This document shows, one piece after another, positions 48,937-50,745 of a stretch of 64,000 nt of DNA; the stretch's first letter is position 1, and the number at the start of each line of letters is the position of its first letter. A model generated the notes under the pieces. It saw only the letters and a list, made by a program, of their open reading frames with translations, was not told the origin of the DNA and did no database searches. Where the stretch lies: positions 8,111,551 to 8,175,550 of the forward strand of contig BFEA01000006.1 of the NCBI GenBank assembly GCA_003427395.1, given 5' to 3'. The position numbers were made by a program, and so were the translations under genes. The stretch comes from Chara braunii (Eukaryota > Plantae > Charophyceae).

Positions 48937-50745
48937 CTACCTTCGTCCAGTGTGAAACTTGTACAGGATAAATGTGAAGATCAGTTGAAATCCTACAGCG
49001 TATCCGGCTAGGATTGCCATATTCTGACTGACATCGACGTCTTCCATCCCCAAGCGCTCAAGAATCGCCTTTGCTTCCGGCGAGTTTTCCTGCCTGAAGT
49101 GCTCATAAACAAAACTCTCGAACGAGTACGAGTGGAATGCCAAGTAGTAGCCCCAGATCCAGTAGTTGGGAATTGACGCCCGTGGCACCATGAAGCCCTC
49201 GCAAAGCATGAACATGCCGAAGAGCCCGGCGCCCAGTGCAATGCCAATTATGTAATGCGGGACGGCGGCACCGATCACGTGCATGAGGGACTCAGCAACC
49301 ACAAGAGAGAGGAACAGGTTGAGCAGGAACGAGCCAAAAGAGTTGATGTCAGCAAGAAACACCACAAGCAACGACGAAACGAGTGCAATGAGAAAGATCC
49401 CCGGCAGCGCGGCGAGGAAGTTTGCCAGCACGTAGCTGATCACACTCAGCGACGAGTTGGCCCGTTCCCGTGTGAAGACCGGGCGTTGTTCTATAAAGAA
49501 GGGAAGCACAGCCACGGACATGAAGACCAGGAATGCCTGCACGTAGAACAGCAGAGGCACTATGTCCTGTTGGGAGATGTCCTTGTTCGTCCGCAAGTAC
49601 ATGGTGCCGACCATGAACGATAGCATGATGTACATGAAGAGTCTCACCCAGAAGATGCCTGGATTACGAACGTTGTTGATGGAACCGCGATACATAAGCA
49701 CCCAGAACTGCCTCCACGCAGACGGTGCAATCGGCTCCAACTGCTTGGTGGCCTCTGCGACTGCACTGTGTCGATCCTCGCTGATATCCCTCGTGATCTT
49801 TGCAGCGGCCGTGCTTGAGGCGTAGGCATTCACGAGGGCGGGGATGTCAGCATGGCCTTCGAAGTCGGCATTCACCAATTCAATGAAGTACTCAGCTGGG
49901 TTGGAGTACGTCGGACAGGCATAGCCGGCAGAGGCGAAGTGGTCTATGCTCGCACTGCAGGACCCAAAATACACCGTCTTCCCTTTACTCAGGATCATGA
50001 GATTTGTGAACATGTCAAAGACCAGTGACGATGGCTGATGGATGGTGCAGATCACATTCTTTCCTTCCTGACACAGTCTTTTGATGAACTTCATCACATT
50101 GAAGGTCGACGACGAATCCAAGCCCGACGTCGGCTCATCCAACAACAGAATCGACGGGTTGGACAGCAGCTCGATGGCAATGCTCAGCCGCCGTTTCTGA
50201 CCTCCAGAGATCCCCTTGTGGAAGATATCACCCACCAACGTGTTCCTACAGACACTGAGACCCATCTCATCAACTACATCCTCCACGCGCTCGTGTATCA
50301 TCGCGTTATCTACGCTATACGGGAGCGAGAGCTTGGCGGCCATCGTCAGTGTCTCTAGGACCGTAAAGGATCCAAGCAGCGACTCTTCCTGAGCCACGTA
50401 GCTTGTCACTGCCCGAAAGGTCTTGGCGTTGCGCTTCGCACCGTTCAGTTCGATTGTCCCTTCTATCCGACCAGTCAGAGAGCTGATGCGATCTGCTAGA
50501 ATATCCAACAACGTGGTCTTTCCCGATCCAGATGGGCCCATCACAGCCGTCAATTCTCCTGGCTGAGATCTGCCCGAAACTCCCTGCAGGATGACCTTCC
50601 TGCCATCGGGGCTCTCCTTGCTTGTCTTGGTCTGTACTGTGAATGTGAGGTTTGACCAGCTCAACGTGCATGGATTCTTCGTTTGGTGGCCAGGTCGGGC
50701 TGACAGGGTTGCTCCGACGCTGACAGCTGCTTCCACGTCCTTCAT
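48937..50745 (-). CDS. ABCG (White/BCRP-type) half-transporter, intron-less, oomycete-like
   Basis: Walker A GPSGSGKTT, signature ISGGQKRR, Walker B LLLDEPTSGLD, CTIHQPS, NPAEY and a C-terminal ABC2 membrane domain. Probable ATG at 50745 (MKDVEAA). Confidence 0.95.
   Translation of the reverse strand: MKDVEAAVSVGATLSARPGHQTKNPCTLSWSNLTFTVQTKTSKESPDGRKVILQGVSGRSQPGELTAVMGPSGSGKTTLLDILADRISSLTGRIEGTIELNGAKRNAKTFRAVTSYVAQEESLLGSFTVLETLTMAAKLSLPYSVDNAMIHERVEDVVDEMGLSVCRNTLVGDIFHKGISGGQKRRLSIAIELLSNPSILLLDEPTSGLDSSSTFNVMKFIKRLCQEGKNVICTIHQPSSLVFDMFTNLMILSKGKTVYFGSCSASIDHFASAGYACPTYSNPAEYFIELVNADFEGHADIPALVNAYASSTAAAKITRDISEDRHSAVAEATKQLEPIAPSAWRQFWVLMYRGSINNVRNPGIFWVRLFMYIMLSFMVGTMYLRTNKDISQQDIVPLLFYVQAFLVFMSVAVLPFFIEQRPVFTRERANSSLSVISYVLANFLAALPGIFLIALVSSLLVVFLADINSFGSFLLNLFLSLVVAESLMHVIGAAVPHYIIGIALGAGLFGMFMLCEGFMVPRASIPNYWIWGYYLAFHSYSFESFVYEHFRQENSPEAKAILERLGMEDVDVSQNMAILAGYAVGFQLIFTFILYKFHTGRR

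What the first reader, a model, noticed from the sequence alone, without database searches (positions are those of the whole stretch)
48937..50745. Intron-less, oomycete-like ABCG gene: candidate horizontal transfer
Seen: an intact single-exon half-transporter with short membrane loops, embedded among host repeats. From memory, the segments NPCTLSWSNL, VPLLFYVQAFLVFMSVAVLP, LNLFLSLVVAESLMH, VPHYIIGIALGAG and the terminal YKFHTGRR match Phytophthora/Pythium-type ABCG proteins much better than land-plant WBC/ABCG proteins. I could not run the search. Inference: eukaryote-to-eukaryote transfer between an oomycete and this alga, direction unknown.
Basis: inference. Interest (0 to 1): 0.8.

Follow-up and report, generated by a model that had tools for sequence, protein, structure and literature searches.

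The report
Water-mould transporter gene in stonewort alga
The freshwater alga Chara braunii, a close relative of land plants, carries and expresses an intact membrane-pump gene that it most likely acquired from a Pythium-like water mould, a direction of gene transfer for which I found no published example.

Summary
Window 48937-50745 (-) is an intact, intron-less 602-aa half-size ABCG transporter on a Chara braunii scaffold. Every named protein among its top 120 hits is oomycete (best 77%); land-plant ABCG11/12/15 reach 33-39%. Trees put it in the oomycete clade (100/100), and grouping with land plants is rejected (AU p=7e-7). Other stramenopiles are the outgroup, so the direction is most likely oomycete to alga. 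The donor is probably Pythiales/Peronosporales-like but unresolved. Oomycete homologues are also intron-less, so that trait is inherited.

Evidence against contamination: single-copy DNA depth equal to the flanks; presence in 20 runs from 6 studies; sense-strand oligo-dT reads; a second strain with three coding SNPs, all synonymous; CpG depletion; and decayed duplicates of the gene's 3' end with 6-7-fold excess CpG transitions, a 5mC signature (Phytophthora lacks 5mC).

Gaps: no read bridges the microsatellites on either side, no copy was found in other Characeae, and the substrate is unknown. The protein family is ordinary; the transfer route is what is new.

The parts
48937..50745 (-). Single-exon CDS of a half-size ABCG transporter, 602 aa: NBD about residues 26-292 (Walker A 70-78, signature 178-186, Walker B 199-204 with catalytic E204, H-loop 236, NPAE motif 282-285) and a six-helix TMD 343-597
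   Evidence: pLDDT 94.4; ABCG2/ABCG1/AtABCG16/25 fold, TM-score about 0.8
50746..50848 (-). 5' leader covered by RNA-type contigs (to 50777 in run X1, to at least 50848 in X13). It holds an out-of-frame 11-codon uORF at 50789-50754. No similarity to oomycete flanks.
48427..48876 (-). Decayed tandem duplicate of the last ~290 nt of the gene (copy of 49221-48932). About 82% identical over aligned columns, with frameshifts, stops, small local duplications and an AT-rich insert. It lies in the 3' UTR; CpG transitions 11/32 against 6/108 at other C/G sites.
48335..48393 (-). Second, shorter decayed copy of the last ~60 nt of the gene (83% identical)
48140..48936 (-). Long 3' UTR, continuous with the CDS in two RNA-type contigs and one DNA contig; CpG o/e 0.50, like the host flank (0.52)
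48029..48138 (.). 25-N assembly gap between a C run and a (TG)n microsatellite; this is where all laid contigs end on the 3' side, so it is the unbridged point
50857..51045 (.). (GAAA)n microsatellite and a 29-nt T run (an A tail on the - strand); skipped by the read tool, so the upstream junction is not shown bridged
51046..51250 (-). High-copy host repeat ending in the A tail, probably a retroposon 3' end, just upstream of the gene
   Evidence: DNA depth 6,000-61,000 against about 10; retroposon label is inference

Best explanation
A single-exon half-size ABCG gene from a peronosporalean (Pythiales-like) oomycete entered the nuclear genome of the Chara braunii lineage and became a working algal gene. 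SHOWN: oomycete ancestry of the protein; an intact frame and all ATPase motifs; single-copy DNA depth; a sense, unspliced transcript with a ~0.8-kb 3' UTR; polymorphism in a second strain that is synonymous only; CpG loss and methylation-type decay of local duplicates. INFERRED: the route (DNA from a parasitic or saprotrophic water mould entering a Chara cell that later gave rise to oospores; DNA- versus RNA-mediated cannot be told apart because the donors lack introns and no A tail or target-site duplication is visible). INFERRED: the age (old enough for saturated four-fold sites, 0.62-0.73 differences, and ~18% decay of the duplicates; after the saprolegnialean/peronosporalean split). INFERRED function: like other intact half-size ABCGs it dimerises, most likely as a homodimer since it is the only copy at this locus and has a complete catalytic site, and uses ATP to export a hydrophobic compound (lipid, sterol or xenobiotic) across the plasma membrane. 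I put about 0.85 on ATP-driven exporter and about 0.5 on detoxification or lipid export as the retained role.
For: All named proteins among the top 120 hits are oomycete, best 77% over 586 aa. An exhaustive HMMER search of 1.84 billion representatives puts oomycete clusters first, then 45-51% proteins including the raphidophyte Fibrocapsa; the identified glaucophyte, red-algal and prasinophyte hits are 37-44%. Careful tree: oomycetes+Chara 100/100, land-plant ABCG11/15 separate at 100/100; Chara with plants rejected, p=7e-7; Chara on the peronosporalean side 99/95. Shared loop lengths. DNA depth 10-11 against 9.7-14.6 in flanks. 20 runs from 6 studies, 2018-2025. RNA-type contig depth 21.8 and 131 against flank 0-6 and 10-13; about 16 oligo-dT raw reads, all in the sense orientation. 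Three coding SNPs, all synonymous, p 0.013-0.04. CpG o/e 0.87 against 1.14-1.24 in oomycete homologues. CpG transition excess of 6-7x in the duplicate, p about 1e-4, against 1.15-1.3x in P. oligandrum paralogues; Phytophthora has no 5mC (PMC6211444).
Against: No laid contig crosses the (TG)n/N gap at 48029-48138 or the poly-T at 51017-51045, so physical linkage to host DNA is indirect. C. braunii cultures are mostly non-axenic and carry fungi (PMC9691404). No copy from another Characeae species was found. Forcing Chara outside all oomycetes is not rejected (AU p=0.063 and 0.34), nor is placing it outside the sampled peronosporaleans (p=0.22). The P. oligandrum control pairs are coding sequence and so an imperfect control; absence of 5mC is shown for Phytophthora, not for Pythium. 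No charophyte ABCG was in my trees. No member of this oomycete subfamily has a substrate I could find.
Confidence: 0.87

Rival explanations
1. Assembly chimera or persistent contaminant: a gene of an oomycete living in the Chara cultures was joined into the scaffold through microsatellites on both sides.
For: Both ends of the laid contigs stop at simple repeats, one beside an N gap. Cultures are non-axenic. The GC3 of 0.68 is closer to oomycete homologues (0.72-0.93) than to most ORFs of the window (0.50-0.65).
Against: It would need the same contaminant at host single-copy depth in DNA and in 6 studies over 7 years. In run X13 the gene and the host flanks both differ from the reference (5/2709 and 12/2570 nt) while in X1 the gene contig and three unique flank pieces show no difference. 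The contiguous 3' UTR is CpG-depleted (0.50 against 1.09-1.23 for oomycete loci) and its duplicates decay by CpG transitions. (TG)n and (GAAA)n tracts recur in this window and are nearly absent from three oomycete loci. The flanks have no oomycete neighbours or similarity.
Confidence: 0.07
2. Ancient shared gene with differential loss, or transfer from the green lineage into the oomycete ancestor.
For: The subfamily is old and widespread (fungi, red algae, glaucophyte, prasinophyte, amoebae). A position as sister to all oomycetes is not rejected.
Against: 77% identity and a short end branch (0.24-0.4) among Pythiales. The outgroups are other stramenopiles with the same 7-residue loop. The oomycete part of the tree separates Saprolegniales from peronosporaleans, as expected for vertical descent. 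No closer green relative among 1.84 billion representatives.
Confidence: 0.03
3. The transfer is real but the gene is a recent neutral passenger, transcribed by chance and not yet decayed.
For: Only three coding SNPs; low read count in one run (about 16 reads in 8.9 million); no phenotype known.
Against: The frame stayed intact while adjacent duplicates of the same sequence lost about 18% of bases and gained many indels. All SNPs are synonymous. Four-fold sites are saturated against every oomycete while the protein stays at 72-76%. All family-invariant residues are kept.
Confidence: 0.03

Closest known systems
Oomycete single-exon half-size ABCG subfamily (annotated 'ABCG11/15-like' in Phytophthora; e.g. 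Globisporangium polare GAB9474668.1, the Pythium oligandrum tandem array, Lagenidium giganteum)
   Same: 72-77% identity, same domain order, same loop lengths, same C-terminal end, no introns
   Different: It sits as one copy in an algal, repeat-rich scaffold rather than in a tandem array or gene-dense oomycete locus; about 10-20 aa shorter N-terminus; lower GC3 and CpG content
Land-plant ABCG11/12/15 (WBC11 group, cuticular lipid exporters; role from established knowledge)
   Same: Nearest land-plant relatives I found; half-size NBD-TMD layout
   Different: 33-39% identity, a separate 100/100 clade, longer loops and C-terminal tail; monophyly with the Chara gene rejected (p=7e-7)
Human ABCG2/ABCG1 and Arabidopsis ABCG16/ABCG25 (solved homodimeric exporters)
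   Same: Same fold (TM-score 0.73-0.85) and motifs
   Different: 25-30% identity; the substrate cannot be transferred from them
Documented eukaryote-to-eukaryote transfers: fungi to oomycetes (cited in PMC5592239; transporter transfers in PMC6431176), microbes to plants (review PMC12448838)
   Same: An intact, expressed foreign eukaryotic gene; transporters are a known class of transferred genes
   Different: Here the donor is an oomycete and the recipient a streptophyte alga. I found no such case in the searchable literature; Ma et al. 2022 (PMID 35235827) and the Chara genome paper were not read.

Membership tests
Half-size ABCG transporter | NBD before TMD, one of each | tested here: met
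   Pfam ABC_tran 53-207, ABC2_membrane 345-547
Half-size ABCG transporter | Intact Walker A, Q-loop, signature, Walker B with catalytic Glu, H-loop, NPAE/D motif | tested here: met
Half-size ABCG transporter | Type V exporter fold with six TM helices | tested here: met
   AlphaFold pLDDT 94; Foldseek TM-score about 0.8 to ABCG2/ABCG16/ABCG25
Half-size ABCG transporter | Dimerises and exports a substrate using ATP | not testable with these tools
   Needs biochemistry
Oomycete half-size ABCG subfamily | Falls in the oomycete clade to the exclusion of other eukaryotes | tested here: met
   100/100; 99 SH-aLRT
Oomycete half-size ABCG subfamily | Nested within crown oomycetes rather than sister to them | tested here: inconclusive
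   Peronosporalean side 99/95 in the ingroup tree, 82-88 with outgroups; AU alternatives not rejected
Oomycete half-size ABCG subfamily | Shared indel lengths and single-exon structure | tested here: met
Land-plant ABCG11/12/15 clade | Monophyly with streptophyte orthologues | tested here: not met
   AU p=7.4e-7; no charophyte sequences were available for the tree
Horizontally acquired functional gene | Read depth like host single-copy DNA and presence in independent samples | tested here: met
Horizontally acquired functional gene | Physical linkage to host DNA by spanning reads | tested here: inconclusive
   Contigs end at microsatellites on both sides; no long reads offered
Horizontally acquired functional gene | Expression and purifying selection | tested here: met
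   Sense oligo-dT reads and RNA-type contigs; 3/3 synonymous SNPs, small sample
Horizontally acquired functional gene | Shared by related recipient species | tested here: inconclusive
   No other Characeae copy found; coverage of Characeae in these collections is unknown
Retrocopy (RNA-mediated insertion) | Lost introns, poly(A) tract, target-site duplication | tested here: not met
   Donors have no introns; no A tract follows the stop and insertion borders are not recognisable

The most novel reading that the evidence does not exclude
A Pythium-like parasite's efflux pump was captured by its algal host and kept under selection: a pathogen-to-host transfer into the sister group of land plants, possibly one of several oomycete genes in Characeae, and possibly turned to defence or detoxification.
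Probability: 0.35. Interest if true: 0.78.

Novelty: new variant of a known kind. Interest (0 to 1): 0.62.

Why it matters
Oomycetes are well known as recipients of foreign genes (from fungi and bacteria), and streptophytes as recipients from bacteria and fungi. An oomycete acting as donor to a close algal relative of land plants is a route I could not find described. The gene is intact, expressed and 77% identical to Pythiales proteins, so it is a clean and testable case. It is also molecular evidence of past intimate contact between Characeae and water moulds. Practically, it warns that Chara ABCG counts used to infer ancestral land-plant transporter sets (such as cuticle-type ABCG11) include at least one foreign gene whose public model lacks its first 68 residues.

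Tried and rejected
A viral vector: no relative in viral contigs. Other charophyte copies: the whole-protein search, the TMD-fragment search, the exhaustive representative search and a metagenome scan found none. The two closest unnamed fragments (81-82% over the TMD) are closer to oomycetes than to Chara at four-fold sites and have oomycete-like GC3, so they are water-mould sequences. Donor flanks or insertion borders: 300 bp on either side score at background against four oomycete flanks. Retroposition: rejected as unnecessary. Exact donor genus: unresolved in four trees. The 61-row careful tree did not finish, so its quick version is cited. The taxid given for MMETSP0958 resolves to a fungus in the local taxonomy; from memory that sample is Aurantiochytrium, so I do not rely on its label. 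Two rows used on the Saprolegniales side (P0084, P0114) are unlabelled and were placed there by the tree only. CpG bias in small host repeat pairs was weak (0.9-3.9x) and is not used as support. Literature: no report of this gene or route in 9 completed searches; Ma et al. 2022 is not held. The large protein search was used once because the claim rests on absence of closer green relatives.

Full report
OBSERVATION. Window 48937-50745 on the - strand is one open frame of 602 codons with an ABC ATPase domain followed by an ABC-2 membrane domain. The encoded protein is on record on scaffold BFEA01000006.1 (8.39 Mb) of assembly GCA_003427395.1. That assembly is Chara braunii (from my own knowledge, and named so in earlier notes on this window). 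The public model has 534 aa and starts at Met69. An AlphaFold model (pLDDT 94) matches ABCG2, ABCG1 and Arabidopsis ABCG16/25 with TM-scores near 0.8. All catalytic motifs and family-invariant residues are intact.

ANCESTRY. In the word-indexed search every named protein among the top 120 hits is oomycete, led by Globisporangium polare (77%), Lagenidium giganteum and Pythium (74-75%), Phytophthora (about 72%), then Saprolegniales (58-65%). An exhaustive search of 1.84 billion representatives gives oomycete clusters first and then a drop to 45-51%, including the raphidophyte Fibrocapsa and other marine protist transcripts; the glaucophyte, red-algal and prasinophyte relatives I could identify are at 37-44%. 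Land-plant ABCG11/12/15, fetched through the prasinophyte protein, are 33-39% identical. Two loop lengths (7 and 56 residues) match oomycetes and not plants. In a careful tree of 31 proteins, Chara plus oomycetes has 100/100 support, stramenopile sequences are the next branches, and land plants form their own 100/100 clade (the same in a 61-row quick tree). Forcing Chara with land plants is rejected (AU p=7e-7). In an oomycete-only tree Chara lies on the Pythiales/Peronosporales side with 99/95. Exact nesting is not proven: placing it outside all oomycetes (p=0.063 and 0.34) or outside the sampled peronosporaleans (p=0.22) is not rejected. Even so, the gene descends from the stramenopile branch, so the direction is most likely oomycete to alga. 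No charophyte ABCG was available for these trees. The oomycete homologues are also single-exon, and form tandem arrays in P. oligandrum.

IS IT IN THE ALGA? Twenty runs from six studies (2018-2025), all under one organism label, hold the gene. In a DNA run that may be the assembly source, depth over the gene is 10-11 against 9.7-14.6 on single-copy flanks, with high-copy host repeats (depth 6,000-100,000) starting about 300 bp upstream. Two runs guessed to be RNA each give one unspliced contig from the 5' leader through the CDS to beyond 48140, at depth 21.8 and 131 against 0-6 and 10-13 on flanks. In a 2026 oligo-dT run, about 16 reads (my estimate from bin depths, 6% of the run read) all lie in the orientation expected for a - strand mRNA. 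Run X13 is a different strain: it differs at 5 of 2709 nt in the gene contig and 12 of 2570 nt in unique flank contigs, and its three coding differences are all synonymous (chance 0.013-0.04).

The 3' UTR contains two decayed direct copies of the gene's own 3' end, 48876-48427 and 48393-48335. They align far better to the Chara gene than to oomycete genes (score 240 against 64-91), so they arose after divergence from the sampled oomycetes. In the longer copy, 11 of 32 CpG positions show C-to-T or G-to-A changes against 6 of 108 other C/G positions (p=9e-5). P. oligandrum paralogues show no such bias (1.15-1.3x; coding pairs, so an imperfect control). Phytophthora has neither 5mC nor its methyltransferases (PMC6211444). 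CpG o/e is 0.87 in the CDS and 0.50 in the UTR, against 1.14-1.24 in oomycete homologues, 1.09-1.23 in oomycete loci and 0.52-0.77 in host DNA. Together these indicate long residence in a CpG-methylated genome. The remaining weakness: contigs end at a (TG)n tract beside a 25-N gap on one side and in the (GAAA)n/poly-T stretch on the other, which the tool skipped, so no molecule is shown joining the gene to host repeats. Cultures are generally non-axenic, although one study reports axenic growth of S276; coded run ids do not let me link that study to a run.

HOW IT MOST LIKELY WORKS. Shown: an intact, transcribed half-size ABCG of oomycete ancestry with signs of purifying selection. Inferred: donor DNA from a water mould growing in or on Chara was integrated among repeats and picked up a host promoter near an A-tailed repeat; a local duplication later extended its 3' UTR. 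Four-fold sites are saturated against all sampled oomycetes (0.62-0.73), so either the event is old or the donor is unsampled. By established knowledge of the family, the protein dimerises and exports a hydrophobic substrate; a homodimer exporting lipids or xenobiotics is my best guess (about 0.5). ABCG expansions in oomycetes have been linked to coping with host metabolites, but for full-size members (PMC8359288); that paper does not mention horizontal transfer.

COMPARISON AND NOVELTY. The protein is an ordinary member of a known family and eukaryote-to-eukaryote transfer is a known process. What is new is the route, oomycete to streptophyte alga. I found no report of it in the searchable library, but key subscription papers could not be read. 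No relative was found in viral contigs or, so far, in other Characeae. Verdict: real transfer 0.87, chimera or contaminant 0.07, other 0.06. New variant of a known kind; interest 0.62.

Noticed in passing
window 50541-50745: The public gene model (534 aa) starts at Met69 inside the ATPase domain and misses the first 68 residues, which RNA-type contigs cover.
   Followed up: yes
window 50754-50789 (-): An out-of-frame 11-codon uORF ends 8 nt before the ABCG start codon; it lies inside the longer of the two RNA-type contigs only.
   Followed up: no
window 51797-52059: Very high-copy palindromic, MITE-like element (arms of 60 and 53 nt, DNA depth about 100,000 against 10).
   Followed up: no
window 52149-52906: Low-copy inverted repeat of about 200 nt per arm (87% identical) enclosing two direct 99-nt repeats.
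   Followed up: no
window 31862-32950 (-): Long single ORF (362 aa) matching the Tetraspanin family above the Pfam cut-off; origin not checked.
   Followed up: no
window 18-1511 (+): 497-aa ORF with a protein kinase domain.
   Followed up: no
window 46438-47221: Degenerate tandem array of about 180-250-nt units, each ending in a (TG)n tract.
   Followed up: no
L003/L004 (Pythium oligandrum SPLM01000039.1): Tandem array of near-identical 620-aa ABCG genes with a period of about 3.3 kb, followed by diverged paralogues of the same subfamily.
   Followed up: partly
protein P0435: A fragment labelled Perkinsus olseni is 60% identical to the Chara TMD, higher than expected for an alveolate; a second transfer or contamination.
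   Followed up: no
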